Notes under the pieces: generated by a model | What the model was told of the DNA's origin: nothing | Database searches by the model: none | Seen by the model: only the letters and a program-made list of their open reading frames with translations | Assembly: GCF_021869535.1 (NCBI RefSeq) | Contig: NW_026262582.1 | Location: forward strand, 5,332,001 to 5,396,000 | Direction: 5' to 3' | Length of the DNA stretch: 64,000 nt | From: Mytilus californianus | Lineage: Eukaryota | Shown here: positions 1,240 through 63,330 of the stretch, in pieces | Layout: each line of letters begins with the position of its first letter | Position numbering within the stretch: position 1 is the stretch's first letter | Made by a program: the position numbers and the translations under genes

Positions 1240-2300
1240 AGTTTAAATGGCTTACCTTCTTTTCCATTTTTATTGAAATGGTGTTTTTTTTCAATCTTGA
1301 TTATGCCATTCAACTTCAGATACCTTTACTGTTACTATATCACGTATATTTTACGCATTGTTTCCATGTTTTGAAGGTAAATTGACTGAATTATATGTAA
1401 ATGATTTTATATAGTCTTGAGTTCCGTAAGGACGGAAGATGATAAGTGTTAGTACTTGAAACAACAATGGCAAGTTTGAAGTGGATGAAAACTTTAAAAC
1501 TGAAATCAACAATATGCTGTTTTTTTATGCCCCACCTACGATAAGAGAGGGGCATTATGTTTTTCGGTCTGTACGTCCGTTCGTTCGTCCGTCCGTCTGT
1601 CCCGCTTCAGGTTAAAGGTTTTGGTCAAGGTAGATTTTGATGAAGTTGAAGTCCAATCAACTTGAAACTTAGTACACATGTTCCCTTTGATATGATCTTT
1701 CTAATTTTAATGTCAAATTAAAGTTTTGACCCCATATTTCACGGTCCACTGAACATAGAAAATGATAGTGCGAGTGGGGCATCCGTGTACTATGGACATA
1801 TACTTGTTTAAATTTTATTTTGCAGTGCTAGGAAAGCAATCGAGAATAGCGAAACATTTAATAAGGAAATTAAAGATTTGTTGTTGTTAATTTCCTCCAT
1901 TTACTTTCGAATGAGTATCTCCATTTCCTTGAAATGACATTACTACTTGATATGAAGCATTAATTCAATACTCAAATTTTCAACAATCTTTCTCAGAAAT
2001 CTTCATTATCAATTTTTAGAATTTAGATGCTTGGGCATAGTACATACTATCTGAGCTCACAAAATGCGTTTACAGTTTCAGTTTTATCAGCTTCAAATGT
2101 TTAGCATAAAGTATAATAGTAAAAGTGTACAGAGGATATTTTTCGTAAGAACAGCTGTTTATGTTTGAATAGTTACAAATTGATGGCGGAAGATATCAAG
2201 GAGACATTAAAAACTCATAGGTAAAGAAAAACTGACCACGTCAAGGACAAAACGTAAAACTGACGGAAAGACAAAACAATATTGCATCAATAACTAACGA
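1240..2300 (-). promoter_or_regulatory. Putative promoter and non-coding first exon of cGLR paralog A (coding part presumably left of the window)
   Basis: Paralogous to 15810-16420 and 62580-63330. Minus-strand TATATAAA at 1413-1406 and donor AG|GTAAG at 1256/1255 are conserved with copy C. Confidence 0.55.
1521..1808 (+). mobile_element. HINE/DINE-1-like (Helentron-associated) element; older copies at about 870-1140 and 62195-62285
   Basis: 5' subterminal ATGCCCCAC with internal IR, (GTCC/GTTC)n microsatellite, 3' GTGGGGCAT plus a short stem-loop, T-rich insertion site; empty site in paralogs at about 15970 and 62880. Confidence 0.75.
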
Positions 2301-3034
2301 ATGAGCAATGCGTAGTTTACAAACTGGACAAGTGAAATAAAACATTGTGTGAATGACAGGGGTAATTATTGAATGTTACAATGTGGGAATGTCATTATCA
2401 ATTTTGTGTACGTTACTCAGTGTGTGTGTGTGTGTGTGTGTGTTTGACATAGTTAATTCCTGTATGTGCCACTGTGTACGTGGGGTAGTTATTTCTTGAA
2501 TGTTACACACTGTGATGGACGTTGGAAGTTCATGTATGTTTCACTGTGTGAAAGACATAGTTTATTCTGTGTTGATAAACGGTGTGAGTGATATGATTAT
2601 TTCTTGTATGTTATACTGTACGAGTGAAATAATTTTGTTTTTATGTTAGGGTGTGTATGGTGTGTGTTCGAAAAGGTTAACTAGACGAGTGCCTCAACTA
2701 GAGCAGGAAACGCTTCAAAATCAGCTACCATCACCCCCGGTTTTTTGTTCGGTTCGTGTTGCTTTTGTCCTTAGTTTTTCTATGTTGTGTTTTGTAGACT
2801 GTTGTTTGTCTTTTTATCATCGATATTCGTTTTTTGCAATGGTGTTGCCAGTTTGTCATTGACTTATGATTTTGAAGTTCTTTTGGTAATATTTCGCCTC
2901 TTTTTTAATTCTTTGTATTTTATAAATTTGTGAACATTACTCCTCTGCAACTGTTTGCCAAAAAATAGTCATATTTGGTATGTTGATAGCCTATAATCCA
3001 GATACTGTTGCAGGAAATGCATGGTAATGTGTAT

Positions 3035-3520
3035 TATAATTTTTTATTAACTGTGTATTTGCATTCAGGTGTCACAGGTCAAATTTATTCGTTCATTGTG
3101 TGTTAATTTACGTTTTTTGATTGAGTTAAGCCTTCCAATTGATATTTTATAGTGTGTTTTTCTATGTTGTACTATTGTTTCAGAAAAGGGAGAAGGTTTG
3201 GTACCATTAAAACGTTTAATCCCGCTGCAAATGTTTGCACCTGTCCTAAGTCAGGAATCTGATTACAGTAGTTGTCGTCTGTTTATGTAGTTCATACGTG
3301 TTTCTGGTTTCTCGTTTTTATATAGATTAGACTGTTGGTTTTCCGTTTGAATGGTTTTACACTAGTTATTTTTTGGGGCCCTTTATAGCTTGCTGTTCGG
3401 TGTGAGCCAATGCTCCGTGTTGAAGGCCGTACCTTGACCTATAATGGTTTACTTTTATAAATTGTAACTTGGATGGAGAGTTGTCTCATTGGCACTCATA
3501 CCACATCTTCCTATATCTAT
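3035..3520 (-). mobile_element. Young interspersed repeat, truncated form
   Basis: Near-identical to 8836-9328; absent from the paralogous position near 17800. Confidence 0.8.
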
Positions 3521-5932
3521 TGATCATCGTGATTTTTTATATGTAGATATAAGAATAATATAGAATTCAAATTGTATAATGTGGACGTGTTGTTATGTAA
3601 ATGTGATACTGTTCGCGTTGGATGAATAAGTGATGAACTATACAATTTACATTTTGTCAAAACAGTCTTTACATTAAACCACAAATTACTTCAGCTTGTT
3701 GGATGCACAATATAAATTACATTTGTTAATAAAACAAATTTCTCTCAATACAAAACATTTTACATGTGAAAAAAAAAAATCCTCTAAAACCAATGAATAC
3801 AATATGATTGTAGGTTTACTTAACTGATTTGAATCTTCTATAAAGGCGTAAGGTGCTGAGTTACATCGTCGACTGTTAGGATTAATACTTATAAACTCTA
3901 CATAGGGCTTATAATCGCTGAATATCACTTCAACGTAACATATTTAAAAGTTAATTGTAATTTTTGTTAATGCATGTTACAATTACGAATATTTATTTAT
4001 AGAGAAACAATGCTTACATTTTGTTATGTTTTCTAATAATTGTGTAATTAAATATACTATTACGTTTTTGTTATTTCTATTCGTAGCTTTAATCGTTATC
4101 ATTTGATAAAATGAAAAAAAAAACTAAAAACAAATTTTCGACGTAAAGTCTTTCATACAGAAGAAAATGTAGGTTTTTCCTAAAGCTTGTATTCGCTGAA
4201 TTTTGGTTTCTAATAATTCATATTTATTGAGCCTTATAAAAGTTTGAAATAATGCTTTTTTCAACGAACACGTGCCATTTGCTTCACACTTTGAATCGAT
4301 ATAATATATTTATTTCTATCGGGCAATGTGCGAACAGAAATAACACGCATATAAATAAAGGTTAGCTATATTTGTAGACTATGCAATATCAAATGAAAAT
4401 ATCCTTAGATATGTCTTAGAAATTGATTTAGGATGGTCTTATGACTTTGCTAAGAAAGGAACTATGATATATTACTTTTGAGCTATATTTAGACATTTAT
4501 AGTTTGGTGTAATTTAATGAAATAATATTGTTAAAAACTCAAAGTTCACTCATGTATCTTTAATAGTGTAAATTAAAGAAAGATTGAATGTTCATTTGTT
4601 AATGACATTTGCTTGAAATAAAATCAGAGTGAATTGGCTTTACCTCATTTTTGGATACATGTAGATAAACTCTGTTGATGAAGTCAACAAACCAAGAGGT
4701 ATTTTAGAATAATTTATAGTTTTTATTTCGGCATATTTATGTAGTATAAAGTGTTATGTCGTTCTTAAGACAAATATGAAACTATCCTAATTGTTAAAAC
4801 TAAATGCTAGGTTATATATTATCTTAAAAGGCATACTTAAATCTGACTTATGACTTAGATATGTCGTTAAAACTGTCTGATAATGTCCTCGTTCTAGGAC
4901 AATTCTTTTGACATATCTGCTGGTATCAAGCTTCCTTTTTTAATATTAATATTACTGTTTTAATGACAGTTTTGTTGGATACTCTAAGCGATCCACATTT
5001 TCACATTCTAACAATAGATTTTTCTTAAAAAAACGAATAATCGTACATTGTCAAGTATATACATTTATTTGTTCTCGTATTTCTTCCTGTTACTGAAGTA
5101 CATGTATGTCATATTTTATGATGATAAATCGATAGTGAATATGCATTCAATGCGTTTCTGATCTACAGCACACTTGTAAATCAATACTTTAAAAAAAAAG
5201 ACTGTTTTTAATCTCACTTAAATCTATCTGCCTCAATAAAACGAGAAAATGGTATAAATAAAGGCAACAGTAGTATACCTCTGTTAAAAAGTCATAAATC
5301 GATAAAGAGAAAACAAATTCGGGTTACAAACTAAAACCGAGGGAAACACATCAACTATAAGAGGAAAACAACAGAACAACAGAAACACTGAACTGCAACA
5401 AAAAGAAACGCTAACATACATAAAACGTTAATAAGACAGTAAACTAACGATAACAGATTATAAAAAAATTTCAGCAGAAAGTTTTAAACTATGAATAAAA
5501 ACAATGGTGTAATGTTTTAAGCCCTAAAAAGACACTGGGATAAACAATTTGTAATCTTTACCAAACAGAGATTTTTCTTTTTTCCAGAAACACCTAAACT
5601 AAATTCTTTTGAGAATAGATTTGTTTTTTAGTCAGGACTATGGGGACGTTCTTTTTGATTTGTAACCGAAGGGTCTAGAAAGATGGGGTCGTGGACGGAG
5701 GTTATGTCATATGTGTTCAAATGCTATTTTATATAATGAAGACCATTACTTATTCGAACGTAATCCTATACAAGTAAAAGTATCAGAAATCAATACATTC
5801 CTGTATTCAGTAAAATATCTCAGGTCAACAAAACTGAAAGGCTTCCTTCATTATGTAATATTAAGCTGCTAAATGTATCTTTAGTCGTTATAAAGTTAGT
5901 AAAAGTGATATAAAGTATACATGTTGTTATCA

Positions 5933-7331
5933 TATAAGTGGACTCAAATCCAAGGTGGGTTCCAGATCTATGGCAGATTCCTCATCTATGGTTAATATGA
6001 CGTCATGCAGACCCAAGTCTATTGCAGATTTTTTAGAGTCCTAATCTATGGCGGATTTCTAGTTTTCAAATCTATGATAGATTTTCTGAGAACCAGTCAG
6101 TACATATCTGACCAATGATTTCAAAGTTGCCTTAAACAAAAGGAAATGTCCAAAGGTAACGAAAAAGCTGCTTTTAAATTAAAGCCAGTATAAGTAAAAC
6201 GGATTAGAGGTACGAATAAGGATCATAAAACCAGGTTAAATCCACCATTTTCTACATAAGGAAATGTTTGTACCAAGTCAGGAATATAACAGTTGTTTTC
6301 TATTCGTTTGATGTGTTTAAGCTTTTGATTTTGCCATTTGATAAGGGGTTTTCCATTTTTAATTTTCCTTGGAGTTCGGAATTTTGTTATTTTACTTTTA
6401 ATCATAATCATTTTTGAAATAAACATTGAATAATGGTCAACCAACTCGTGATGACAACCATAAAATTGTCCTAGTAGGGAAGTGATACACACAAATACAG
6501 ACTTTACTTATAAGTATTTCCTACTCTGTGCATGGTACCTGGTTGACCCGGTAATTTACCCAAGTTCCTTAACAACCAAAACAAGTAGTTTGTATGGAAA
6601 GAATCAAACAGTTTGACTTTTTACCTTATATTTCTTTGAGCGTTTGAAGTGATGACGATTTAAGACAAAGTCCTGTAATGAACAATGATTCAAACAAGTG
6701 GATTTCTTAAAAAATCCCTATTTCTCCAACAGTACATTTATTCGACATAAATATAGCTGAACATAATGTAATTAGTCATCAGCAATCTATGACAGATTTT
6801 TTTTTGTCCAAATCTCAAGATAGATTATTTACAACAATAGTACAGGAAGTCGCTGTATTATAATATAACAAGGAGCGGAAACACAAACGAAACATGAACT
6901 CCGAAAACACCAAAAACATATTCATTTGCGTGAAATTGCCTGCACCAGCGGGTTTGCTGCTACGAATGACAATGGGTTTATTTTTATATCATCCAAATCA
7001 GATTAGTACATTTTCTCTTTTGTAGGTTTTTCCGTCACAGTAAACTCAAATTCTGAAATAAAATCTAATTCGAGGATAAGGGTCCTTGAAAACTGGCCTA
7101 TTCTTTTCCTTCTTTATAAAAAAAACCGGCATCGTTAGCGGCGACGTGGACATTATAGTTTACTCTTTTTTCCGGAAAATTACGTAATGTCAAAATCTGC
7201 CATAGATTTGGAAAAAAACAAAAACACTGCCATAGATTTGTGACTTGTTTGGCGTTTGTGACGTAAATTTACCATAGATTAGAAATTTGCCATATATCTG
7301 GAACCCACCATAGATTTCAGTCCTACATATA
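5933..7331 (+). mobile_element. Non-autonomous TIR/foldback element with reiterated AATCTATGGC subterminal motifs, (TA)-flanked
   Basis: Left end GGACTCAAATC..GGTTCCAGATCTATGGCAG and right end CCATAGATTTCAGTCCTACATATA are inverted. Ends and interior match the reverse complement of 57016-59078. Carries a nested repeat at about 6210-6400 that is also present at 26470-26735. Confidence 0.8.
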
Positions 7332-8630
7332 TTCTAGTTAAGGGTTATTTTGTTTCATGTTTTCTGGCTACATGTTTTCACATGTGTATTAACAAAGTGT
7401 TGTATATCTGAAAAAAGATCAAATCATATATATTCAGTTCTGTAACATTATGAAATGAATAGCTTTACCCCTTTTTTTTGGTTTTTGATCTCTACAATTT
7501 TAATTTTTTTTTCTTTCATTTTTTACAAAGAACATTTTGGTCATTGGGCTATCATTTTAACTAAACATGCATGAAATTAATTGGAACAAATCATTGAAAT
7601 TGATCAACGTTGTCTACAGTATATGCAATATTAGATAAGGTTAATGTTATAATCTGTGTTCATTCTACACTTTGAGATAACCCTTAATCCACAGTTTACA
7701 TGTCGTCCTAGACATAGGTAAAAAGTGCCAGTATATATTAGTTTTCGAAAATGTCTAGTCGACCCTGGGCTAGAAAAGTCAATTTTCACTTGTTTCAAGG
7801 CAGTCTTATTTATTTTCATTTGGTTAACAACTACGTTCAATCTTGCATTTTGTCTGGCAGAATACTCATTTTCATTCTGTCACGGAGAAGATTATATATG
7901 TTCTGTTCTAACCAGGTCACCATCAAAGGCAGTGATCTTGAAAGCTGGATGAAGAGTTGATAATTACATTGGCAATTTTTCTGAAAAATTATTTAGTAAC
8001 TAAGTCTAGAAAGACACTTTCCCTGTAAGCTCGCCACGCCCAACATCATTTCTTCTTTCACTTTGCTCAACTTTCTAGGGCGATATAGCAAAAAGGGTAA
8101 ACATTGGTTGAGGTAGCTGTAAACATAGTAAACGTTAGAAAGGAGGATGAAGTGTGTAAACTCTTTCACTAAAAAGGGGCGGGAGAAACCAATTTGAAAT
8201 TCAAAACTCTAACGTCGAAGGAAGAAAATGAAAACGCCATGTAAAAAAAAACGAAAAACGGAAAAGCGAAAAAAAAATATCCGCAACACTACAGATAAAA
8301 CTTTAGACTGAGCAAAATGAAACCTGCAAAAAATCGGCGTTTATCTTAGGTGCTTATGAGGTATTTTAAAACGATATAAGTATAGCTTTGACCTTCGATA
8401 TTTGGGTTCACGGTCATATTAGGTAAAGGTTATTTGTTTTAAGCACGTGTCGCACATACTGAAAATTAGCACGTACGTGTATATATTTCTAATACAGATT
8501 CGATAGCATTATATAATCATCTTGCTGGTCGGAGATATGCTGGAAATATCTATTGAAAATAATAAGCATCTCAATAATAAATAATGAAATAATAATAGCA
8601 TCGTGTTGTCGTCATAATGAAAGTTAATAT

Positions 8631-9328
8631 GGTCTTCCTTAACGGAAGATTTTATACACACAGAAGAAGAAGTATACTTAAAAACAAAATCATTTTCATT
8701 TACCTGTGTATAATATGACGCAGGTTTTTTCAAAAGTGATGATTTTCTAAATATTGTTTAACATTTCACAGTGGTATCATACTTTAACTTTGTTTAAACC
8801 TGTTTATTTACTTTTGACCTTAATTATTTATCCCTTATAATTTTTATTAACTATGTATTTGCATTCAGGTATCACAGATCAAATTTATTCGTTCATTGTG
8901 TGTTAATTTACGTTTTTGGATTGAGTTAAGCCTTCCAATTGATATTTTATAGTGTGTCTTTCTATGTTGTGATGTGATACTATTGTTTCAGAAAAGGGAG
9001 AAGGTTTGGTACCATTAAAACGTTTAATCCCGCTGCAAATGTTTGCACCTGTCCTAAGTCAGGAATCTGATGTGCAGTACTTGTCGTCTGTTTATGTAGT
9101 TCATACGTGTTTCTCGTTTCTCGTTTTTATATAGATTAGACTGTTGGTTTTCCCGTTTGAATGGTTTTACACTAGTAATTTTCGGGGCCCTTTATAGCTT
9201 GCTGTTCGGTGTGAGCTAATGCTCCGTGTTGAAGGCCGTACCTTGACCTATAATGGTTTACTTTTATAAATTGTTACTTGGATGGAGAGTTGTCTCATTG
9301 CACTCATACCACATCTTCCTATATCTAT
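8631..9328 (-). mobile_element. Young interspersed repeat, long (about 700 bp) form; possibly rolling-circle (Helitron/Helentron-derived) non-autonomous
   Basis: Near-identical by eye to 57386-58083 and, in part, 3035-3520. Minus-sense 5' end GGAAGATGTGGTATG, 3' end ATCTTCCGTTAAGGAAG hairpin; no TSD seen. Confidence 0.75.
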
Positions 9329-12109: not shown

Positions 12110-14540
12110 TAAAATAGCTTGTTATCTCATTGTCTTGTACCTCACGTTTCCGTTTATAGAAATATTGTTAGGGGTTTTGATAGGTTGATATCTTAACGAT
12201 TAATACCCTACCTTTCTATTAATAGTCATATTAGTTGGAGGTTAATATAGGTTGCTCACATTTCCATTGATAGACATATTTGTTGTATGTTTTGATAGTT
12301 TACTGTCTCGTATATGTGTCAAAAAGTTATATCCCACTATTCAAGTCATCGTCATGTTTGATGAAATTTGGATAGATTGCTGTCTTGTTGAAGTATACCC
12401 TACATTTCCATTCGTAGTCATTACTTGTAGGTTTTGTTGGATTGCTTTCTAATTTATTTATAAATCACATTTCCATTTATGATTGTATTTGTTGGATGTT
12501 AAGGTATGTTGCTGACTGCTTGACGCTTTCTCCACCTTTTCATTTATAGTCATATTTGCTTGAAGTTTAGACAGATTTCTGACTGATCGACATTTACCAC
12601 ACATTTTCATTCATAGTCATTTTTTGATGAAGTTTTGAAGAAGTTGTCATTTTACCCCTCATTCTTTTTCGTAGTCTAATTTGTTCGAGGATTTGATAGG
12701 CTGCCGTCTCATTGACTTATGTCTCATATTTCCATTCATAGTTATATTTGTTGGAAGTCTAGATAAGTTGCTGACTGCTCAACTTTTACCAAACATTTTC
12801 ATTCATAGTCATTTTGGATGAAGGTTTGAAGAATTCTCATTGAATCATGTCTCAAAATTCCATTCAAAGCTATATTTGTTGGACATTTCGTCATTTCGAT
12901 AGGTTTCCGCTTATTTTCATTCATGCTCATCTATGTTGGATGTTTTGATAGGTTGCTGTCTCATTGACCTATATTTTTCATTGACCTACTCTTATATCCC
13001 ACATTTCCATTCATAGATATATGTGTTTGGGTTTGTGATATGTTGCTGTATCAATTACTTATATCTCACTTTTTCATTCATTGAAATATTTGTTAGGTTT
13101 TCGATAGGTTGTTCTCTCATCGATCATTGCACCTTAAATTTCCATTCATCATTATGTTTGTTTGATTTTTTGATCGGATTCTGTCTACTTGAATAGTATC
13201 TTTTACTACTTGGGATAAGTTCGCATTCAGAAATGATTGTTCAAGTTGTCCATTAATACATATGAATGTATATTTTGTTAAATCTAAATGTTCTTGGTCT
13301 TTTATAACTGGTTGCTTCCGTTTGATCTAGATATGCGTAGATAAAGTGTTTGCGCATTAATTTCATGAGTGTATGACGTAGAAATCAGGACTTTCATTCG
13401 ACATGAATTATGGTTTATTAAATATGAAAATTTCTTTGATGATAACTAAAGAAAGAGATTCTTGCATAGTTATTCGTGGATATAGGCAACTAAGTTTTGA
13501 TATTGTATTTATTTTGTGTCATAGATCAGACTTATTCGTTCAGTGTGCGTCTGTTTTTTTATGTTTATATGTCTTTTTGATCGAGTTAAGCCATTTCAAT
13601 TGATATTTTATAGTGTGTCTTTTTATGTTGTAATGTTACACTACTGTCTCAGGTTATGGTGAAGTTTAGCGCCTGTCTAAATGTTTAAACTCGCTGTATG
13701 TTTATGCACATGTCCTAAGTCAGGAGCCTGTTGTTCAGTGGTTGTCGTTTGTTGGTGTAGTTCATAATTGTTTCTCGTTTCTCGTTTTTTATATAGATTA
13801 GACGGTTTGTTTTCCTGTTTGAATTGTTTTACACTAGTTATTTTCGGGCCCTTTATAGCTTGCTGGTCGGTGAGAGCTAAGGCTCCGTGTTGAAGGCCGT
13901 ACTTTGACCTCTCATTGTTAACTGTTTTTACATTGTGATTTGGATGGAGAGTTGTCTCATTGGCACTCATACCACTTCTTCTTGTCTATAATTATTGGAT
14001 TTATCGATTCTCGACAGTTAAATTATCGAAATCTAACAATATCGATGGGATAAATCCTATAATCCTATGATACTTATTTAAGAACCTATATTTCTATTCA
14101 TAGTTATATTGATTGGAAGTTTAAATGGTTAGCTGTTTAATAATTGTATATCCTCATTTTCATTCAGTCATATTAATGGTAGATTTTGACAGGCTGCTGT
14201 TTCATTTACGTGCAACCGGACATTTCCATTCGTAGACATATTTGTTGGGGTTTGTGATAGTTTGCATTCTATTTGATTTGTACATCACATTTTTCATTAA
14301 TAGAAATAGTTTTAGGGTTTTGGGTTGCTGTCTCATAGACTTATTCTCCATATTCCCATTCATCGATATATTTATTGGAGGTTTTGCACGATAGTTTGCT
14401 GTCTCAATGACTAATATCCCACACTTGCATTCAGTCAAATTTGTTTAAGTTTTTAATAGTTTAAAGTGAAACTGACGTATTCTCCTCATTTTTACTTAGT
14501 CATTATGTTGAATATTTTTGTAGGTTGCTGTCACATTGAC
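12110..14540. repeat. Degenerate satellite of about 67 bp (two blocks, about 12110-13200 and 14090-14540)
   Basis: Recurring TCATTGACTTATATCCCACATTTCCATTCATAGTCATATTTGTTGGATGTTTTGATAGGTTGCTGTC; interrupted by the 13490-13990 repeat. Confidence 0.8.
13490..13990 (-). mobile_element. Older copy of the same repeat superfamily (GATGTGGTATGATTGCCAATGAGACAAC type); others at about 25790-26190(-), 32045-32215(+), 34910-35515(+), 38195-38340(+), 38815-38890(+), 44395-44565(+), 46130-46255(+), 54440-54805(-), 62290-62480(-)
   Basis: Shared blocks GTTGTCTCATTGGCA(C/A)TCATACCACATC, TTGAAGGCCGTAC, TTTATAGCT(T/G). Confidence 0.75.
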
Positions 14541-14549
14541 CTTTACTCT

Positions 14550-15004
14550 ACCATAAATTTTCATGAACGTTGTTTTTGGAGATACCAATGACAAATGGTA
14601 GAGTTTATACTGGTCACTTGAAAACATACATCACAGATGACTTTTTTGACACCAGTTTTCGCGTACTTAGCGATAATCTAGAGGACATAATTGTGTGAAA
14701 AATGGCTGGGTCTCCTTTGTTTTCATAATCAAGGGAATATTCAGGCCATTAAGGACTACTCCTGTTTCTAGTTGATACACTTTAAACAAAGGATTAATAT
14801 TAATGATATCAAAATTACTGCCTTTTAAATCAAGTCCTTCTGCTTTACTTCCGCTATATATTGCTTGTTATTTATCGATGTGTCTGATTTCTAGAATATA
14901 AGAATTCACTCTCCTAATTCCACCTCCTCCTCAGATCAAATTTTCGGACATAGATATAAGTAAAAATTTAACGATTCCCCTTTTTCTGTAGATTTTCTTA
15001 CCAT
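14550..15004 (-). pseudogene. cGAS-like/Mab-21 (cGLR) nucleotidyltransferase pseudogene, copy B (N-terminal part only)
   Basis: Minus-strand reading MVRKSTEKGESLNFYLYLCPKI*SEEEV...SGSKAEGLDLKGSNFDIININPLFKVY...PLIMKTKETQPFFTQL...FSSDQYKL...KIYG. The GSKAEGLDLxGSDxD motif is the Mab-21/cGAS NTase signature. There are several stops and a frameshift, and it is truncated at the adjacent satellite. Confidence 0.85.
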
Positions 15005-15837: not shown

Positions 15838-15871
<34 letters not shown>

Positions 15872-16420
15872 TTATATAGTCTTGTATTTTCTTTCTGGAG
15901 GAAGTTGATAACTGTAAGTGTTTATAACAATAATGGAAATTTTCAGTAGATGAAACAAAAAATATGGGATTTTCTATTTTTATTTTGTAGTGTAAGGAAA
16001 GCAATCAAGAACAGGGAAACAGTTACTAAGGAAATTAAAGATTTGTTGTTTTTAATTTCCTCCATTTACTTTCTAATGAATATCTCCATTTCCTTGAAAT
16101 GACATTGCTACTTGATATGAAGTGATAATTTAATACTAAAATTTTCACTAGCATTTCTTTTTACTCTTCATTATCAAACTTTTTGAATTTACACACTTGG
16201 ACATTGATATTACATACTATATGAGCTCAATAAATACATTTTCAATTTCTGTTATATCAGCTTTTATTTTTTTTAATATAAAGTAGAGTAACACTTTACT
16301 GATGATATTTTTCGTTAGAACACTTGTTTATGTTTGAATATTTAAAAAAGAAGCGGAAGATACCAAGGGGACATTTAAAACTCACAAGTAAAGGAAAACT
16401 TACTATGCTAAATAAAAACA
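15810..16420 (-). promoter_or_regulatory. Paralogous upstream/promoter block of cGLR copy B
   Basis: Aligns with 1380-2300 and 62730-63330; TATATAAA at 15878-15871. The first-exon donor is missing because the block abuts the Penelope fragment. Confidence 0.55.
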
Positions 16421-16514
16421 GCAAGTAAAGCATTAATGTTAATATTTTTCTACTGTTAATGAGGAAAAAATACTAGAATCCCTCAATGGCTCTTTTTCCT
16501 TCTTCCCCAAGTAC

Positions 16515-49616: not shown

Positions 49617-49618
<2 letters not shown>

Positions 49619-51020: not shown

Positions 51021-51123
51021 AGTTATAAATTAAAATAAAACCTACAACAAGTAAGGAGGAAACAATCTATTATGTACTTTTCCTTGCAGATAACCATAAA
51101 ATTAGCTTGTTAATTAAAAAAAA

Positions 51124-51690
51124 TTCAAACTCATAAGTCGAAAACAAACTGACAAACTGATAAAAAAAACTCTTAAGAGAAAGGCGAATGATACCAAAGG
51201 AACATTTAAACGCATAAGTCGAAAACAAAAAGACAAACTGATAAAAAAAAACTCTTAAGAGAAAGGCGAAAGATACCAAAGGGACATTCAAACTCATAAG
51301 TCGAAAACAAACTGATAAAAAAACTCCTAAGAGAAAGGAGAAAGAAACCAAAGGAACATTCAAACTCATAAGTCGAAAACAAAAAGACAACCTGATAAAA
51401 AGAAAAACTCTTAAGAGAAAGGCGAAAGATACCAAAGGGACATTCAAACTCATAAGTCGAAAACAAACTGATAAAAAAAAACTCTTAAAAGAAAGGCGAA
51501 AGATTTCAAAGGGACATTATAACTCATAAGTCGAAAACAAACTGATAAAAAAAAACTCTCAAAGAGAAAAGCGGAGAGACCAAATGGACATTCAAACTAA
51601 TAAGTCGAAAAAACAAACTGAACACGTCATTGCGAAAACATGAAAAACGACCATAAGACAAACAACAGTACACAACACAGACAATAGCAA
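51124..51690 (-). repeat. 72-84-bp tandem array made of the Penelope-like 3' terminus, 7 units
   Basis: ATAAGTCGAAAA at 51133, 51214, 51296, 51368, 51452, 51526, 51600; the unit matches the terminus at 19030-19090 and 22870-22933. Confidence 0.85.
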
Positions 51691-54600: not shown

Positions 54601-56078
54601 TTTTTCGTTCATTTTTTATACACAAATCAGAACGTAAGTTTTCTTGTTTGAATTGTTTTAGATTTGTTATTTTGGGGCCTTTCATAGCTTGCTATGCGGT
54701 ATGGGTTTTGCTCATTGTTGAAGGCCGTACGGTGACCTTTCGTTACTAACATTCTACATCATTTGGTCTCATTGGGAACCACACCAAATATTCTATTTTT
54801 ATAGTAATTCTTATCTCCGGGAAATGATTAACCATAAGACTAAGTACAGAATTCGAAAGAATTTGAGTTAAAAAAACAAACCTTCAAGTAAGCTATTAAA
54901 ACAAGTCTCGTTATAAGATGTCATTGATCTACTTTACCATACTTACAGATGCGTCATACCAGTTTAATAGATGCTTGAAGAAACCATAACAATGTCCATT
55001 ATAAGGTATCCATCCATGTGGGCATTTTGGTAATAGAAGACCATCAACTATAGAAAGGCTCTTATATTATTATATTGAAATTAAGGTAGACCGGTTGTCT
55101 TTTTCTGAGCATCATTTCTTCGCAAGGTGCCAAACAAATTGTTTGGTTTGCAAGTATGTTACCAAGTACATAGTGTATCATTTTATATACTAGAAAAAAA
55201 CATCTAAAACTTGAAATTAAAAGATCAGAAATTGAATTTTAACCAAATCGTTCATTTAATGTGTCCTCAACGAGGAAAAATGAAGTTTCCCTCGTATTAC
55301 CCATTTAAAATAACTGTGCTTTCGCTAATTTCAATGTATTTTAACGAAAGGAATAATTGTGTCCGTGACCCGAACTTTTTATATTGAAATTTGAAAGTCC
55401 AATGACCCAAAACTCTCTTACAGAATTTTAAGAATAAATTTATTGTCGAACATTTAGACACGTTATGACACCTATTATATAATAAGTATCTTTCTAGTCA
55501 AATCTGGTATTTAAGTTATGACCCATCAATCATTTAGATTAACATAAGGCCATTTTGTTTTATAAATAAATGTTATTTACATCATTTTGAAAATGCTGAT
55601 TCAATGGCAGAGAAATTCATAAGATTCTAGTTTAACAAATTAAAAACAACATTGTAAAATAGATGTACGAGTTTGGTTAATATTATTTAGATTTTCGATT
55701 GAAGTTACTCATCTATTAACACAATTTACACATCATAATAATATATGATATGTCTTACAATAAACACATAGCACTATCAACACATGTCCAAACAATTACA
55801 TGATTTAACAGAAATTCTGTTTGTCCTTCGTATGGTCAGATACAATTTAATGACCTTGTTCAACCTATATAATCATTATGTCTTCCAAAGATAACCTGTG
55901 TTAGTGTCATTAGGACCCAGACAAATTCATCTGGACGTACTGTAAATTTAGAAACTTTTTGTGCGTATTTAATATTATGATACAATGGACAAGAATAACA
56001 GATTAGTTAGTTTTATTTAAGGAAATGTTGCATACAAAGAATGCGATTTTTTATTTTTGCAAAACCTATCCCGTCGCA

Positions 56079-56640
56079 ATCTCAGGTGCTCCGGAAGTGT
56101 AAGCAGATTCTGCTCCACATGTGACACCCGTCGTATTGCACATGTTAGTACAAACCCGGTGATAAGTCTAATTTGGTAGGTCACATTCGGGGAAAGGGGA
56201 CGGAACATATCCGTTGCCACAAGTGAAACGGATATTCCATATCGGTCAACCAACTCGTGGAGGCGTCCGTAAAATTTACGAAGGGACAATTTCAACTTCA
56301 CAACTTGGAACTCTTGGTTTAATAGCTTTCTTGTGAGCAACAACCCTCTATCAAGGAAATCATGATAGGAAATACAAGCCCTGAAATATCGTATCAACTG
56401 GGAGATATATACTCCGAATGCAGGCGCTACTGGAATGTTGCTACATAGAAATGGAAAGGTCATAATTGGGAAGCTGAAATCGCCTCTATTGTCGTAAAGT
56501 TTTGTTTTCAACCGACCCTCATTGTCAATTTCTAGATATCAGTCCAGATATGAGGCAGACTTAACTGTATATGTTGTGTCCTCAATCTCAAGTTCGATGG
56601 GATTGATGCGTTCAACAAAGTCACCAAATTTTGAATTATT
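56079..56640 (-). mobile_element. Penelope-like retroelement, 5'-truncated RT C-terminal fragment (best-preserved copy)
   Basis: NNSKFGDFVERINPIELEI...KTKLYDNRGDFSFPIMTFPFLCSNIPVAPAFGVYISQLIRYFRACISYHDFLDRGLLLTRKLLNQEF...KFYGR. It lies about 190 bp past the cGLR-C stop. Confidence 0.8.
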
Positions 56641-57015
56641 TACTTTAACAATCAAAGTAAAATTGTACTCGTTACAAAGAAATATATTATACACATACAA
56701 AGTATTTCCCATAGTATTTTTTACATTATTTACAGAATCTGCAAAGAAACATGATTTAGTACAGCTTTTGGTTCACATTTCAAAAACTCAAAGTAACATA
56801 TATATTGAATTAGTCATTGACATATCAGTATCAGAAGACACAAGATAATCTTAATGCTGCACTGGTTAAATTATTCTTATCAAGCATAGCAGTTTGTTGA
56901 TATAATTGTCTAGCAATGTTAGTCTCACTCATTAACTGGTGAGCCATGCCACAAAAAATTGGTGAATACATGAATCTGATTGTTTCAAAAGCTGTTAAAT
57001 TTAATATCGATGTTA

Positions 57016-59078
57016 TATATGTAGGACTCAAATCTATGGTTGGTTCCAGATCTATGGCAAATTTCTGCAAATTTCTAATCTATGGTAAATATGATGTCAC
57101 AAACGCCAAACAAATCACAAATCTATGGCAGTATTTTGTTTTCTCCAAATCTATGGCAGATTTGGATACTACGTAATTTTCCGTCACAATTAAATAACGT
57201 CATGGACTACAAATTTTCACTTCAGCGTACTATGAACATCAAAATTATTTCATTTCTCCTTCAATACTGTTCTTGCACCTGTACAGGAAGTTTTATCTAG
57301 CACTAATTGTATAGTTTTATTGTTGATATTCACCCCATATGTACCAAGAGTTAGATTAGTTTCATTGATATTAAAGAAATTTCTTGGTATTCCTAAACGG
57401 AAGATTTTATACACACAGAAGAAGTATACTTAACAACCAAATTTTTTTTCATTTACCTGTGTATAATTTGACGCAGGTTTTTTCAAAAGTGAAGATTTTC
57501 TAAATATGGTTTAACATTTCACAGTGGTATCATACTTTAACTTTGTTTAAACCTGTTAATTACTTTTGACCTTAATTATTTATCCCTTATAATTTTTATT
57601 AACTATGTATTTGCATTCAGGTATCACAGATCAAATTTATTCGTTCATTGTGTGTTAATTTACGTTTTTTTATTGAGTTAAGCCTTCCAATTGATATTTT
57701 ATAGTATGTCTTTCTATGTTGTGATGTTATACTATTGTTTCAGAAAAGGGAGAAGGTTTAGTACCATTAAAACGTTTAATCCCGCTGCAAATGTTTGCAC
57801 CTGTCCTAAGTCAGGAATCTGATGTACAGTAGTTGTCGTCTGTTTATGTAGTTCATATATACGTGTTTCTCGTTTCTCGTTTTTATATAGATTAGACCGC
57901 TGGTTTTCCCGTTTGAATGGTTTTACACTAGTAATTTTTGAGGCCCTTTATAGCTTGCTGTTCGGTGTGGGCCAAGGCTCCGTGTTGAAGGCCGTACCTT
58001 GACCTATAATGGTTTACTTTTATAAATTGTTACTTGGATGGAGAGTTGTCTCATTGGCACTCATACCACATCTTCCTTTATCTGTGTAACGTCGAAGCTG
58101 CCGCTGACGACGACGGTTTGTTATACAAAAGGAAAAGAAAAAGATCGAAAAGCAAGTTTACAAGGATCCAAATTAATAAATAAATTATAATTTAGAATTT
58201 TGTTTGTTTCTACCCTTGTTTTCTTCTTCTCGTGTTGCTGGTGTTGGCAGCACCCTTAATTGTACGAGTTTTTACCGTGCATTTTGGTTTGCTGTTTTGT
58301 CTTTTTATGCTATTTTTTGTATTCCTATGATCTCTTTAATTTTCTGTAAGAAGTAACACAACATAAAGTATTTTGTCAGCTATATAACAGTGACTACCTG
58401 TACTATTGTAGCAAATAATCTTTCTTGAGATTTGGAAAAAATAAATATGACATAGATTTCTAATAGATATTAATATCGTTTTCCGCTATAAATATGTCGA
58501 ATAACTGTACTGTTGGAGAAATAAGGATTTTTTTTTATATAGTCACGTGTTTGAGGCGAGTCATTGTTCATTAAAGGAATTAAATCGTCATCAGTCCAAC
58601 AAGATTTATATTATTCAACGCTCAAATAGATATTACTAGTAGTTTAAAATTCAAACTGCCTTTTTGTTGTTAAAGGTCTTGGTTAAATAAAGGGTCACAC
58701 AGGTACTATGCACAGAGTAGGAAATAATTATTCTTCCGGGCACATGATTTCAACCCTAAAGTCTGTGTCCACTTTACAACCGGTTATGGATATGCTTCCT
58801 AGTAATAGTCCTAATTTGTTTTTCTTATACTGGTTTTTACTTAAAAGCAGCTCTTTTGCTTCCTTTGGACATTTCGACCTCGAAATCATTGGTCAGATAA
58901 GTACTGACTGGTCCGACCTTTGCAGAAAATCTGTCATAGATTTGAAATCTAGAAATCCGCCATAGATTAGGACATTAAACAAATTGCCTTAGATTAGGAA
59001 TGGCATGACGTCATATTTACCATAGATTAGGAATCTGCCATAGATTTGGAACCCGCCATAGATTTGAGTCCTATATAT
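57016..59078 (-). mobile_element. Second copy of the AATCTATGG foldback element, inserted in cGLR-C and carrying a nested younger repeat
   Basis: TATATGTAGGACTCAAATCTATGG ... CCATAGATTTGAGTCCTATATAT; splits the cGLR-C coding remnant. Confidence 0.85.
57386..58083 (-). mobile_element. Young interspersed repeat, long form, nested in the foldback element
   Basis: Collinear with 8631-9328; absent from the sister foldback copy at 5933-7331. Confidence 0.8.
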
Positions 59079-61196
59079 ATTTTAATTAAATACCGATTTT
59101 AGATTTTTAAATAATGTCTGCTTGATGTAATTTCCTGGAGATGGTAGGAACATAAGAAACTTAAGAAATTTGCAAATGGCAAAGGATGCATGTACGCATG
59201 GTTGTCTGTAACAACTAATTGTAATTCTAATGGAATTATTGATGACTTCCTGTGAACTGTAACAGCTTCAATTGTTATTGCTTTTAAAACTGTATACAGT
59301 TTTTCCTTTTCCATGAGGTTCAGCTCAATAATGTCATCTTTGTGTTGCAGCAATGCATAATTGATTACACGTAATGAGGCAAAGTAATTTTTATGAACAT
59401 AGAAGAAGGAAGCCAACAGCAGCCATCCTGATATTGCATCTGAATGTAATCCTATCACTGATTGAGATCATATTTGTACTTGACGTATTGTTGCTTGTTT
59501 TCTGAGCTATATAGATATTATGAAGCTTCTGAAACAATCCAATACGCCTTATACCTTAAATATAGAATTAATATTCATTATATCTAAATCACTGCCTTTA
59601 AGTCAAGTTCGTCTGCTTTACTTCCGCTATACTAGTATATTAATTGCAATTTATTGATGTGTCCAATTTCAAGAATATTAAAGTTCAACCTCTTAGTTTG
59701 CACAACCTCTTCAGATCCAATTTTCTTACATAGATATTTGTAAATATTTAACGATTCACATTTCTCTGAAGATATTCTTACCATGTCAATCTACAAAATA
59801 GGTTATCATCAACTATTGATAAAAGTAGCAATTACTTCTTATTTTACAATGCAAAAAAATAATAATAATATTGAACTGCAGTTGTTTTTAACCTGATTTA
59901 TTTACTAATTGAGCAACTGACAGTAGAGTCAAAAGAATCAGAGGTAGTTATCATTCAAATCACTTTGTCGGGAAATCCAGTATAAGGTTTGTGAGAAAAA
60001 AATTGATATGGATTAAGATGGAAAATAGATCTATTTGAGTGACAACATATCTCATGTGTTTCATGCCTTGCCTATGATAATAGGGGTACATCATAATTTC
60101 TAGTCGATGTGTTTGTTCTTTCATTCGTTCTAGCGGTATCAGGTTAATGTTTAATTTGAAACAGTCAGGATTCAACTTCGTCAAAATTATCTCCCCATTA
60201 CGTCACCGTAAAAATGGAAGCCATTGTAGGGATGACACGCTGTCAAGTTAGCTTTTGAAACCCGAAAAATTTATCCGTATCATTATGATCCTTATATCAC
60301 AGTTGTATGTTTAAAAGACAAATGTATCTACTAGCTACTAAGCATCGTTTAATGTACCTTCAGGTCTTTAGTCAACATAAAACTATTGTCTGATCGGTTG
60401 TCAGAGGGGATTTTCTAAAGTTCTCAAACACTAAAAATAATCTAATTAAATATTTCGCGGAAGGGCAGACTTAAATATTTTATAAGTTGACGATTAACTA
60501 CCATAGATAATACACAAACAAAAAATGAAATTTGTTTGAAGTTATGTATTTTTAAGATTCACTTAAAAAGTCTGTCGACAAGTACTGTTAGTTAAATTTG
60601 TTATTCAAACACACCTACTCTATTGTTATGACTCACCAGAAAGGTATTTCACTTGACCCACATATTTCTCTTTTTAGTACTGTGATTTTTTAAAATGTAA
60701 TTATATCAACCTGTAGCCTGAACATATAAAAATAATAGAACCTGAAGCGATATGTATTAAATATACGTTTTCAAGTACAAATAGTCAGATCAAACACGAC
60801 TGAACATAAAAAGGTGTACTCGACATTCTATTTTCGATGAAATTATTGCCCATTTTTAAAAAGATCAATCTTTATCTTTCTATTGATTTTGTTTTTGGCG
60901 GAATCTATGCTTATGCACAAAAAAGATCCAAATGTATTTGCATCTACCACAATCGACTGTTTTGTGGAAATTTGTCTTTAATTTAAAAGTGTACAAATAT
61001 CTCCAAGCTTCATACTATTATTTAAGTAAAAACACGTGTATAAAATGCATACAATCCTAAATTATGCGCCTACATTAAACTTTTAAAACCCATAGAAACT
61101 GATGTAAACAATTCAAATATTCCAACTTGGCCTTTTTTACCTTCTCTTATAAAGAGTTCCATTTCTTTTGTTTAAATTCTACTGGATATCAGCCTG

Positions 61197-62170
61197 GAAC
61201 GAGCAACACGAAGCCCATCAAAAATCGGGGGTAATCGCAGGTTCTCCGTAAGGGTAAGACAGTTTGGTCATATTCGTCACCCGTCGTGGTAAAGAACTTA
61301 GTGGTGATACGTCAGTTCTAGTTCGGAACTAAGTCTAATTCGGTAAAGTTGCATTCGTTGAAAAGGGGACGTGATTGTGGTTACGACAATTTAAACATAT
61401 CAGTCATCATCTGCGAAACAGATATTCCGTAACCGTTAACCAACTCGTGATAGCGTCTGTGACATTATCTAAATAATGACTTCAACCTTTGCACTTGAAA
61501 ACCCTGTGTTAATATCTTCCTTGAAAGCAGGAAACCCTTTACAAATGAATCATGATAGGAAATGCAAACTCTTGAATATCGTATCGACTAAGAGATTTAT
61601 ACTCCATATGCAGGCGCTGCTGGAATGTTGCTACATAGAAATGAAAAGTTCCCAATCTCTTCTGTCGTAACATTTTGTTCCCAACCAACACTTATTGTCA
61701 ATGTCTAGATGTTAGTCAAGAAATGAAGCAGACTTAACTGTATCCGTTATATCCTTTATTTTAAGTTCGATGGAATAGAAGCTTTCAACATATTCACCAA
61801 ATTTTTAATTATTTGGTGAGTGGACACCATCTATATAACGGTACGTAAAGTTTAAGGATAATGCTATCTTCATTTCATTCTTCATAAGAAGCTGCCGTAT
61901 GAAGTCTAACTCGTATGAATAAAGAAACAAGTCAGAAAGAAGAAGAGCAAATTTGGTTCAATGGAAATGCCGATTGTTTTTTAAAAACACGTCCTCAATA
62001 CGTAACAAACATGTCGTTAACCAACAAATCAGGCATCTTTATAATGTCAACTTTAGAGAAGTTTTTCGTTAAACGAGAGTTGTTATTTGTCCCTCCCTGG
62101 TTAGATAGTGTAGAATTAATCTGTAGTCGCATCAACTTTAAACTTTTTTTAGACGTTCATTATGATATAA
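61197..62170 (-). mobile_element. Degenerate Penelope-like RT fragment in the cGLR-C intron
   Basis: Minus-strand remnants of GIPMG-like, DLFLYSYELDFIRQLL and YRYIDG (RYIDD catalytic motif) followed by the same thumb region as 56079-56640. Confidence 0.8.
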
Positions 62171-62579
62171 ACTTTTTAATTTATTATGCTAGGTAAGGCT
62201 TTGACTTAGATTTCACAGTTCATTGTACATGGAAATGTGATAGTGCGAGCAAAGCATGGTATCAAATGGGCACATATGCTTGTTATGTACATACATCAGG
62301 CCGTTAGTTTTATCGTTTGAATTGTTTTACATTTGTCATTTCGGGGCCTTTTAAAGCTGACTATGCGGTAAGGGCTGTGCTCATTGTTGAAGGCCGTACG
62401 GTGACCTATAGATGTTAATTTCTATATCATTTGGTCCCTGGTTGAGAGTTGTCTCTTTGGATATCATACCACATCTTCTAATTTTGATAATGGTTTCATT
62501 ATGGAAAAGGAATAAAAGATGATAGAAATATTGTTTATGTAACATGTCTTGGGAAAGGTAAAACCAACACGATTTAACA

Positions 62580-63330
62580 TTTATAATTTCTAAACTTCTT
62601 ACCTTTAAGTCTCTTTCCATTTACTTATTTAAAATTTAGTTATTATTTTCAATCTCTAAAATTCTGTTTAACTTTGAATAACTTTTTATGACTATATCCT
62701 ATATATTGTACACATTGGTTCAATGTTCTGAAAGTAAATGACTGAACTATATGTATATACGTGACTTTATATAGTCTTGTATATTCTTTCTGGAGGAAGT
62801 GAATAACTCTAAGTTTTCAAAACAATAATGGAAATGTTCAGTAGATGAAAACTTTAAAATGAAACCAAAAATATAGGATGTTTTATTTCTCTTTTGCAGT
62901 GTTAGCAAGAACAGGGAAACTCTTTATAAGGAAATAAAAGATTTAATGTTTTTAAGTTCCTTTATTTACTTTCGTATGAGTATCTCCATTTCCTAGAAAT
63001 GACATTACTACTTTATATGAAGTTATAATTTAAAACTAAAATTTTCACTTATATTTCTTTGAAATCTTCATTGTCAAATTGTTTAGATTTTAGAGAATGG
63101 GCATTGATAGTACATACTATTTCAGCTCACAAAATACGTTTTCAGTAACAATGTTATCAGCTTCAAATTTTAGGCATAGATTAGAGTAAAACTTTACACA
63201 GGATATTTTTTGTAGTAACAACTGTTTGTGTTTGAATATTTAAAAATAGAGTCGAAGGGTACCAAGGGGACATTTAAAACTCAAAAATTAAAAAAAACTG
63301 TATATGCCATGGTTAAAAAAAAGAAGGTAA
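62580..63330 (-). promoter_or_regulatory. Putative promoter and non-coding first exon of cGLR copy C
   Basis: TATATAAA at 62773-62766; donor AG|GTAAG at 62603/62602, which could splice to the acceptor at 59791; paralogous to 1240-2300 and 15810-16420. Confidence 0.6.

What the first reader, a model, noticed from the sequence alone, without database searches (positions are those of the whole stretch)
1240..63330. Hidden cGAS-like receptor (Mab-21/cGLR) birth-and-death cluster bracketing the window
None of this is obvious from the ORF track. Two minus-strand remnants carry the cGAS/Mab-21 nucleotidyltransferase signature GSKAEGLDLxGSDxD (14550-15004, 56831-59784). Each has the same upstream non-coding block, and a third copy of that block (1240-2300) points off the left edge. 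Seen: motifs, stops and paralogy. Known: cGLRs are cyclic-dinucleotide-producing innate immune receptors that are greatly expanded in bivalves. Inferred: a tandem array with rapid turnover, possibly with a functional copy immediately left of position 1.
Basis: partly seen in the sequence, partly recalled or inferred. Interest (0 to 1): 0.75.

Follow-up and report, generated by a model that had tools for sequence, protein, structure and literature searches.

The report
Mussel cGAS-like receptor gene and two dead copies
The window from the California mussel genome holds two decayed copies of a cGAS-like innate-immune receptor gene, plus the promoter and first exon of an intact, already annotated copy lying just left of the window; this is an ordinary example of gene birth and death in a family known to be hugely expanded in bivalves.

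Summary
The genome is Mytilus californianus.

- **psi1 (15004-14550, minus strand):** it keeps codons 1-149 of a ~635-aa Mab-21/cGLR protein. It has four in-frame stops, a frameshift, a D64N change, a lost splice acceptor and no 3' three-quarters.
- **psi2 (59784-56837, minus strand):** it keeps codons 1-76 and ~409-634. It has stops, frameshifts, a ~1-kb internal deletion that removes the catalytic core, and a 2.1-kb repeat insertion.
- **Intact copy:** An intact 635-aa ORF (LOC127717497) ends 490 bp left of the window. It has a cGAS/cGLR fold, the full G-S / D-x-D / D active-site motif, a TPR-like tail, and dN/dS of 0.39 against its M. galloprovincialis orthologue.
- **Upstream block:** it is the TATA promoter plus a short exon 1 of a two-exon gene, not a generic repeat.
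- **Phylogeny:** the three copies form one clade. Both dead copies split off before the M. californianus / M. galloprovincialis divergence, so they are old. M. galloprovincialis has its own young, frameshifted duplicate.
- **Extent:** no other members lie within 184 kb, and an unrelated gene sits between psi1 and psi2. This is a loose three-member cluster rather than a tight array.

Expression and enzymatic activity remain untested. The result is a new member of a known kind, of modest interest.

The parts
1..1255 (-). 3' part of intron 1 of the intact gene LOC127717497. The coding exon (635-aa ORF) lies outside the window at window-relative -2397..-490 (C2:5329603-5331510, minus strand).
   Evidence: Intact ORF, 100% identical to the annotated M. 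californianus protein. Donor GT at 1255-1254. Conserved acceptor TTTTGTAG six nt before the ORF's ATG. The same splice is used in the M. galloprovincialis model P0027, 'MEKK|TDMGRK'.
1256..1389 (-). Predicted exon 1 of the intact gene. Inr-like TCAGTC at 1389-1384; mini-start ATG GAA AAG AAG at 1267-1256.
   Evidence: Read directly from the sequence. Collinear with the M. galloprovincialis exon 1 that ends ATGGAAAAGAAG|GTAAAC. No RNA support was obtained.
1390..2236 (-). Promoter block of the intact gene. TATATAAAA at 1413-1405; conserved proximal and distal parts at 1392-1526 and 1818-2236.
   Evidence: 81% and 78% identical to the psi1 and psi2 blocks. The core is conserved upstream of at least 5 paralogues elsewhere on C2.
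1528..1817 (.). 290-bp high-copy interspersed repeat inserted into the promoter block of the intact gene.
   Evidence: It interrupts collinearity with psi1, psi2 and the M. galloprovincialis orthologue. Contig depth here is about 10,000 times that of the flanks, and the RNA reads are only partial matches from other copies.
14550..15004 (-). psi1: pseudogene remnant covering codons 1-149. It has 4 in-frame stops, 1 frameshift near 14915-14918, and D64N in the catalytic D-x-D. The acceptor AG is changed to AA at about 15012-15011. Everything after about codon 149 is missing.
   Evidence: tblastn E 1e-27 and the printed alignment. Family profile E 2.7e-20. Acceptor alignment.
15853..16408 (-). 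psi1 promoter block (TATATAAAG at 15878-15870). The 3' part of exon 1 and its donor are lost.
59552..59784 (-). psi2 5' coding remnant, codons 1-76, with one in-frame stop and one frameshift. The acceptor AG at 59792-59791 is intact.
59105..59550 (-). psi2 coding remnant, codons about 409-573 of the TPR-like tail. It is joined directly to codon 76 by a deletion of about 1 kb that removes the rest of the NTase core and Mab-21_C. It carries a stop, a frameshift and a 14-codon deletion.
   Evidence: DNA junction at 59550. tblastn E 8.5e-40. Profile E 2.4e-39.
57017..59104 (.). 2.1-kb insertion of interspersed repeats splitting the psi2 coding remnant.
   Evidence: It separates codons 573 and 575. 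It contains 57385-58083, which is 95% identical to 8630-9326 and 94% identical to 3034-3518, plus segments repeated in inverted orientation at 5940-7340.
56837..57016 (-). psi2 3' coding remnant, codons 575-634.
   Evidence: tblastn E 3.7e-13. Profile E 3.6e-10. 3' flank homology extends to 56765.
62490..63307 (-). psi2 promoter block plus exon 1. TATATAAAG at 62773-62765; mini-start ATG at 62620-62618; donor GT at 62602-62601.

Best explanation
This is a three-member local cluster of one subfamily of the Mytilus cGAS-like receptor (Mab-21/cGLR) expansion, all on the minus strand.

Each unit is a two-exon gene. It has a TATA promoter and a short exon 1 (5' UTR plus a 4-6-codon start), an intron of 0.8-2.8 kb, and one large exon. 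That exon encodes a cGAS-fold nucleotidyltransferase core, a Mab-21 C-terminal lobe and a TPR-like helical tail.

The leftmost unit (LOC127717497; its coding exon lies 490 bp left of the window) is intact and has been under purifying selection. The two units inside the window are old, unprocessed pseudogenes that arose by DNA-level local duplication before the M. californianus / M. galloprovincialis split.

By inference from the family, the intact protein would be activated by a ligand. It would then make a cyclic-dinucleotide-type signal for one of the STING-like genes present in the genome. The dead copies have no coding function.
For: **Shown**
- Remnant coordinates and lesions.
- An intact 635-aa ORF identical to the annotated protein.
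- Mab-21_C at E 5.5e-15.
- AlphaFold model with pLDDT 83.9. Its best PDB matches are Sp-cGLR1, mouse cGAS and Cv-cGLR1, at probability 1.0 and target-normalised TM 0.57-0.70.
- G52, D64, D66 and D160 are invariant and S53 is near-invariant in 78 homologues.
- The D160 column aligns with the 'SVDLTL' strand of Sp-cGLR1.
- TPR-like tail (weak).
- Conserved TATA, exon 1 donor and acceptor, which match the M. galloprovincialis model MEKK|TDM.
- The block lies 1-2.4 kb upstream of at least five other paralogues.
- L, psi1 and psi2 are monophyletic, with 100/99 support on coding sequence and 100/100 on the promoter.
- psi1 and psi2 fall outside the M. californianus L / M. galloprovincialis clade.
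- dN/dS is 0.39 overall and 0.27 in the catalytic half, with dS 0.31.
- No other members within 184 kb.
- STING_LBD exon hits above the cut-off at several loci on C110.
- Extreme cGLR radiation in bivalves, and cGLR-TPR architectures, are published (PMC9980059).

**Inferred:** ligand activation, the nucleotide product, and STING coupling.
Against: - No RNA-seq read fell on the intact ORF or exon 1 in the one true RNA run. Only about 6% of that run was read.
- The only hint of transcription is four short contigs in a run whose RNA label is a guess.
- A 290-bp repeat sits about 115 bp upstream of the TATA box of the intact gene and could impair its promoter.
- The Pfam Mab-21 NTase model scores below its cut-off on the intact protein (17.9 against 24.1 bits).
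- The catalytic-domain pI is 8.1, below the >8.5 reported for nucleic-acid-sensing cGLRs (PMC9980059). The ligand therefore cannot be inferred.
- In the C-terminal tree, psi2 is not resolved as sister to the L lineage.
Confidence: 0.88

Rival explanations
1. The repeated units are copies of a mobile element that carries a Mab-21 gene as cargo, and the 'upstream block' is part of the element rather than a host promoter.
For: The family is enormous: 996 first-look candidates for this protein and 646 for Mab-21_C. The CDS sits in one exon. One M. coruscus model is fused to HARBI1 (P0100). Repeats surround the units.
Against: The block contains a TATA box, a spliced exon 1 and an ordinary intron. 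It is found only next to members of one subfamily, at 69-81% identity, not as a high-copy element. Only about 70 nt at one edge is high-copy. No terminal repeats or transposase accompany the units. The three local copies are each other's closest relatives, as expected for local segmental duplication.
Confidence: 0.04
2. The two remnants are not dead. They are exons of, or templates for, functional products, for example truncated decoy proteins, regulatory non-coding RNAs driven by the retained promoters, or gene-conversion donors for the intact receptor.
For: The promoter blocks are better conserved between copies (78-81%) than the coding remnants (73-77%). psi2 keeps its TATA box, exon 1 ATG, donor and acceptor. 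A 117-codon open stretch survives in psi2.
Against: In-frame stops and frameshifts lie inside the homologous stretches. The catalytic core is deleted in psi2, and three-quarters of the gene is gone in psi1. psi1 has lost its acceptor and exon 1 donor. No RNA data were obtained for these stretches. Divergence of about 25% argues against recent gene conversion with the intact copy.
Confidence: 0.06
3. The intact left-hand gene is itself a recently silenced or non-enzymatic member. The locus would then hold no working cGLR.
For: Zero reads in the RNA run sampled. A repeat is inserted in the promoter, and it is absent from M. galloprovincialis. The Pfam NTase model is sub-threshold. Orthologue models in M. 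coruscus and M. galloprovincialis are shortened (P0002, P0027).
Against: The ORF is intact. All catalytic residues and splice signals are intact. dN/dS is 0.39 over dS 0.31. The M. galloprovincialis copy 1 ORF is in fact uninterrupted over 635 codons, so its shortened model is an annotation artefact. No indel appears among the indels the tool listed (2 more not shown) for the stretches of the ORF that contigs from two other runs cover.
Confidence: 0.2

Closest known systems
Animal cGAS-like receptors (cGLRs) as defined by Li et al. 2023 (PMC9980059), including bivalve Cv-cGLR1 (PDB 8gjw) and coral Sp-cGLR1 (PDB 8gjy)
   Same: The intact gene shares the cGAS/Mab-21 fold, the complete G-S / D-x-D / D active-site motif and the Mab-21_C lobe. 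It belongs to a lineage-specific radiation in a bivalve. Several STING-like loci are present in the same genome.
   Different: It is only 17-20% identical to solved cGLRs. It carries a ~290-aa TPR-like tail; that paper lists this architecture class among the 13% of cGLRs with appended domains, but it has not been characterised. Ligand and product are unknown. Two of the three local copies are pseudogenes.
Human cGAS (MB21D1)
   Same: The fold and the catalytic triad geometry are shared. The profile aligns to cGAS chains at E 1e-14.
   Different: I did not look for the cGAS zinc-ribbon. There is no disordered basic N-terminus. The catalytic-domain pI is 8.1, and there is an extra TPR-like domain. 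The CDS sits essentially in a single exon.
Birth-and-death evolution of expanded invertebrate immune receptor families (e.g. bivalve TLR, C1qDC, C-type lectin families: PMC10279657, PMC6835236, PMC10140915)
   Same: It shows local DNA-level duplication including the promoter, differential survival of copies between congeneric species, and pseudogene remnants beside an intact member.
   Different: Here the dead copies are old (pre-speciation) and widely spaced, 15 and 45 kb apart, with an unrelated gene between them. This is not a dense young tandem array.

Membership tests
cGLR / cGAS-Mab-21 nucleotidyltransferases (intact left-hand gene) | cGAS-type bilobed NTase fold | tested here: met
   AlphaFold2 model with pLDDT 83.9 and pTM 0.76. 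Foldseek top hits are Sp-cGLR1 8gjy, mouse cGAS 4o6a and Cv-cGLR1 8gjw, at probability 1.0, E about 1e-10 and TM by target 0.57-0.70.
cGLR / cGAS-Mab-21 nucleotidyltransferases (intact left-hand gene) | Pfam Mab-21_C (PF20266) and Mab-21 NTase (PF03281) domains over the gathering score | tested here: inconclusive
   PF20266 scores 55.8 bits against a cut-off of 24.1, so it is met. PF03281 scores 17.9 bits against 24.1, so it is below the cut-off on this protein. Many close homologues carry both.
cGLR / cGAS-Mab-21 nucleotidyltransferases (intact left-hand gene) | Complete active site: h-G-[GS], then 9-13 residues, then [DE]-h-[DE], plus a third acidic residue on a later beta-strand | tested here: met
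   G52-S53, then 10 residues, then D64-I-D66, and D160. G52, D64, D66 and D160 are invariant in 78 homologues, and S53 is S in 77 of 78. The D160 column aligns with the D of 'SVDLTL' in Sp-cGLR1. That this D is the catalytic residue rests on my knowledge of cGAS (hcGAS D319).
cGLR / cGAS-Mab-21 nucleotidyltransferases (intact left-hand gene) | Ligand-stimulated synthesis of a cyclic di- or oligonucleotide | not testable with these tools
   Requires recombinant protein and nucleotide-product assays.
cGLR / cGAS-Mab-21 nucleotidyltransferases (intact left-hand gene) | A STING-type receptor in the same genome | tested here: met
   PF15009 STING_LBD exon-level matches above the cut-off at several C110 loci: 28.20 Mb, 9.65 Mb and a 67.40-67.70 Mb cluster. 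Coupling to this particular cGLR is untested.
Unprocessed (duplicated) pseudogenes (psi1, psi2) | Significant homology to a functional paralogue, with disabling lesions inside the homologous stretch | tested here: met
   psi1 has 4 stops, 1 frameshift, D64N and a lost acceptor, and is truncated after codon 149. psi2 has stops, frameshifts, a deletion of about 1 kb (codons 77-409) and a 2.1-kb insertion.
Unprocessed (duplicated) pseudogenes (psi1, psi2) | Retention of promoter and intron structure (not retroposed) | tested here: met
   Both keep the TATA promoter block upstream of the coding remnant, with intron-like spacers of 0.85 kb and 2.7 kb.
Unprocessed (duplicated) pseudogenes (psi1, psi2) | No translated product / neutral evolution | not tested
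No population data were examined.

The most novel reading that the evidence does not exclude
The two dead units may not be inert. Their TATA promoter blocks are better conserved between copies than their coding remnants are. psi2 also keeps all its splice signals. The units might therefore still be transcribed as regulatory or decoy RNAs, or serve as a sequence reservoir for diversifying the intact cGLR-TPR receptor. They sit within a Mytilus cGLR-TPR repertoire that may number 600-1,000 loci, larger than any cGLR repertoire reported so far.
Probability: 0.07. Interest if true: 0.65.

Novelty: new member of a known kind. Interest (0 to 1): 0.3.

Why it matters
The locus documents, at base resolution, how one branch of the bivalve cGLR radiation turns over. 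Duplication carried the promoter along with the gene. Copies decayed by deletion, repeat insertion and splice-site loss. Congeneric mussels kept different copies.

It also defines the gene architecture for a large cGLR-TPR subfamily whose annotated start codons are inconsistent: a TATA promoter, a tiny exon 1 and one large exon. That helps annotation and the choice of candidates for biochemical screens.

It does not change what is known about cGLR biology.

Tried and rejected
- **Pfam on the remnants.** Scanning the four longest stop-free remnant pieces gave no hit even at E 10. The remnants keep only regions that Pfam also misses in the intact protein, so this is not evidence against homology. 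A family-specific profile was used instead.
- **Mixed Mab-21 ORFs.** tblastn with twenty genome-wide Mab-21 ORFs gave only weak hits, until the ~650-aa subfamily and then the neighbouring intact ORF were used.
- **Gene structure of LOC127717497.** It could not be looked up because the record is withheld. The structure was inferred from the M. galloprovincialis orthologue instead.
- **RNA evidence.** The only real RNA run gave zero reads on the gene from 6% of its reads, which is inconclusive. The kind of runs X4 and X5 is unknown, so they were not used for expression.
- **An inverted third remnant at 5940-7340.** This was rejected. Those stretches match the repeat insertion inside psi2, not coding sequence.
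- **Rfam.** At gathering threshold it found nothing in the window.
- **C-terminal domain.** The Foldseek search gave only weak TPR matches (E 0.03-0.2), so 'TPR-like' is a lead, not a finding.
- **STING search.** At E 1e-5 it was blank because the search is exon by exon. It was repeated at E 1.
Full report
**Source.** The window is AT-rich eukaryotic DNA (GC about 32%). It is C2:5332001-5396000 of a 1.65-Gb assembly. The protein encoded just left of the window is 100% identical to 'uncharacterized protein LOC127717497 [Mytilus californianus]', so the genome is the California mussel.

**Observation.**
- A six-frame motif scan found YSGSKAEGLDLKGSNFDI at 14835-14852 (minus strand). It also found LKGSDLDIM at 59576-59596 (minus strand).
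- The genome holds a very large Mab-21 family. All 150 scored PF20266 matches exceed the cut-off, out of 646 first-look candidates. PF03281 gives 145 matches at E <= 0.001, all over the family cut-off.
- ORFs of ~650 aa from this family matched the two stretches.
- Extending 30 kb to the left revealed a full-length relative at window-relative -520..-2361. It is an uninterrupted 635-aa ORF at L021:7603-9510 on the minus strand, which is window-relative -2397..-490.
- With this ORF as query, tblastn delimits psi1 as 15004-14915 plus 14918-14550 (aa 1-149). It delimits psi2 as 59784-59593, 59602-59552, 59550-59464, 59455-59105 and 57016-56837.
- A profile built from 78 homologues was searched against every stop-free six-frame piece of 104 kb. 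It hits only these pieces and the intact gene, at E 2.4e-39 to 3.6e-10 for the four main pieces.
- Another 80 kb of flanks contains neither coding remnants nor the promoter block.

**Lesions.**
- psi1 has a stop at codon 23 and a frameshift at about 14915-14918, followed by three more stops.
- Its catalytic D-x-D reads N-F-D. Its splice acceptor AG has become AA.
- Homology ends at codon ~149 (DNA homology ends at 14586), so about three-quarters of the CDS and the 3' flank are missing.
- psi2 has a stop after codon 50 and a frameshift.
- At 59550, codon 76 joins directly to codon ~409. This deletion of about 1 kb removes the rest of the NTase core, including the third catalytic Asp, and the whole Mab-21_C lobe.
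- psi2 also has another stop and frameshift, and a 14-codon deletion.
- A 2,088-bp insertion (57017-59104) is made of interspersed repeats. One of them, 57385-58083, is 95% identical to 8630-9326.

**The intact protein.**
- Pfam gives Mab-21_C at E 5.5e-15. The Mab-21 NTase model gives only a sub-threshold match.
- An AlphaFold2 model built on a 78-sequence alignment (pLDDT 83.9) has as best PDB matches the coral and oyster cGLR1 structures and mammalian cGAS, at probability 1.0.
- G52, D64, D66 and D160 are invariant, and S53 is S in 77 of the 78 homologues.
- In a profile-to-PDB alignment (E 9e-18 to Sp-cGLR1), the D160 column falls on the D of 'SVDLTL'. From my knowledge of cGAS, that is the strand carrying the third catalytic Asp.
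- Residues ~345-635 form helical repeats whose nearest structural neighbours are TPR proteins. This match is weak.
- cGLR-TPR architectures, and cGLR radiations of more than 200 genes in some bivalves, are already published (PMC9980059).
- STING ligand-binding-domain exons are present at several loci on C110.
- The catalytic-domain pI of 8.1 does not point to a ligand class.

**The upstream block.**
- Self-comparison shows the block in all three units.
- Genome-wide, it recurs at 69-74% identity, 1-2.4 kb upstream of at least five other paralogues on C2. It also occurs at two C121 loci and one C110 locus where no coding match was found in the stretch fetched. Only about 70 nt at one edge is a high-copy repeat.
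- The multiple alignment shows a conserved core that ends in GACTATATAAAGTCA, followed by a TCAGTC initiator-like motif.
- Downstream, the intact unit reads ATGGAAAAGAAG|GTAAG (1267-1254). psi2 reads ATGGAAAGAGACTTAAAG|GTAAG (62620-62601).
- Six nucleotides before the long ORF's ATG there is a conserved TTTTGTAG acceptor.
- The annotated M. galloprovincialis orthologue begins MEKK|TDMGRK, exactly this splice.
- The block is therefore the promoter plus exon 1 of a two-exon gene. The M. californianus protein may start six residues earlier than annotated.
- The stretch most conserved across the paralogues contains TTCAAGGAA, which fits TTC-N3-GAA, and GAAAGT/GGAAAT motifs. Reading these as STAT- or IRF-type sites is my speculation.
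- In the intact unit, a 290-bp high-copy repeat (1528-1817) is inserted about 115 bp upstream of the TATA box. It is absent from M. galloprovincialis.

**History.**
- On the first 450 nt of the CDS, the three local copies form a clade with 100/99 support against the 15 closest paralogues in the genome. On the promoter block, support is 100/100.
- When other species are added, the intact gene groups with two M. galloprovincialis copies (100/99-100). psi1, psi2 and a M. trossulus / M. coruscus lineage (LOC134701268 / P0094, apparently open) branch outside this group, within a 100/99 clade.
- So the duplications predate the species split. The dead copies may have live counterparts in other mussels, though the tree cannot say which.
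- M. galloprovincialis has a lineage-specific tandem duplicate about 5 kb downstream that carries frameshifts.
- Between the M. californianus gene and M. galloprovincialis copy 1, dN/dS is 0.39. It is 0.27 in the catalytic half and 0.56 in the tail, with dS 0.31. This indicates purifying selection.

**Expression.**
- One true RNA-seq run, of which about 6% (10.3 M reads) was read, gave no read on the ORF or exon 1. Reads fell only on repeats.
- A small run whose RNA label is a guess has four short contigs confined to the ORF, at 97-98% identity.
- Contigs from two further runs of unknown kind cover parts of the ORF, and none of the indels the tool listed (2 more were not shown) falls inside it.
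- Expression is therefore unresolved.

**Layout.** All three units are on the minus strand, about 15.5 kb and 45 kb apart. GPCR-like exons on the plus strand (42328-47716, with DRL and NPLVF motifs) lie between psi1 and psi2. This is a loose cluster, not a dense array.

**Verdict.** The biology, birth and death in a known bivalve cGLR radiation beside an annotated gene, is expected. It is a new member of a known kind and of modest interest.

Noticed in passing
window 8630-9326, 57385-58083, 3034-3522, 13516-13997: A ~700-bp interspersed repeat has copies 94-95% identical to each other (8630-9326, 57385-58083, 3034-3522) and an older copy at about 80% (13516-13997). The young copies suggest a recently active element. 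One of them lies inside the psi2 insertion.
   Followed up: partly
window 56017-56511 (-); also 15343-15776, 61202-61646, 41899-42210: The only ORF of 130 aa or more in the window (164 aa, no Pfam hit) belongs to a repeated element. That element is also present inside the intron-equivalent of psi1 and of psi2, at 67-72% identity.
   Followed up: partly
window 42328-42600, 44811-45116, 47357-47716 (+): ORF pieces with GPCR-like motifs (…TLDRLYV…, …NPLVF…) lie on the plus strand between the two pseudogenes.
   Followed up: partly
window 50315-51015 and 51123-51621; 17203-17466; right flank 63993-64500: Satellite arrays are present: a 50-bp unit x14, a 74-154-bp unit, and ~36-bp units. Similar short tandem repeats lie just upstream of the promoter block in all three units (2342-2650, 16422-17527, 63993 onward), so the duplicated unit extended beyond the promoter.
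   Followed up: partly
L048:19109-20993 (M. galloprovincialis OZ263158.1): The M. galloprovincialis orthologous locus has a second tandem copy about 5 kb downstream with at least three frame changes. The annotated 378-aa model of copy 1 (P0027) skips codons 306-563, although the genomic ORF is uninterrupted over 635 codons. This is probably an annotation artefact.
   Followed up: partly
genome-wide (G000), e.g. C165:71.1-72.8 Mb, C13:73.08-73.42 Mb, C165:58.1-58.4 Mb: There are dense clusters of ~650-aa single-exon Mab-21 ORFs. The first look gave 646 (PF20266) and 996 (this protein) candidates, which suggests a repertoire well above the >200 reported for other bivalves. No census was made.
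   Followed up: no
window 1-64000: Rfam at gathering threshold found no RNA family, and ARAGORN found no tRNA. They were not examined further.
   Followed up: no
G000:C110:67.40-67.70 Mb, 28.20 Mb, 9.65 Mb: Several STING ligand-binding-domain exon matches, including a cluster of at least five loci, suggest multiple STING-like genes in this mussel.
   Followed up: no
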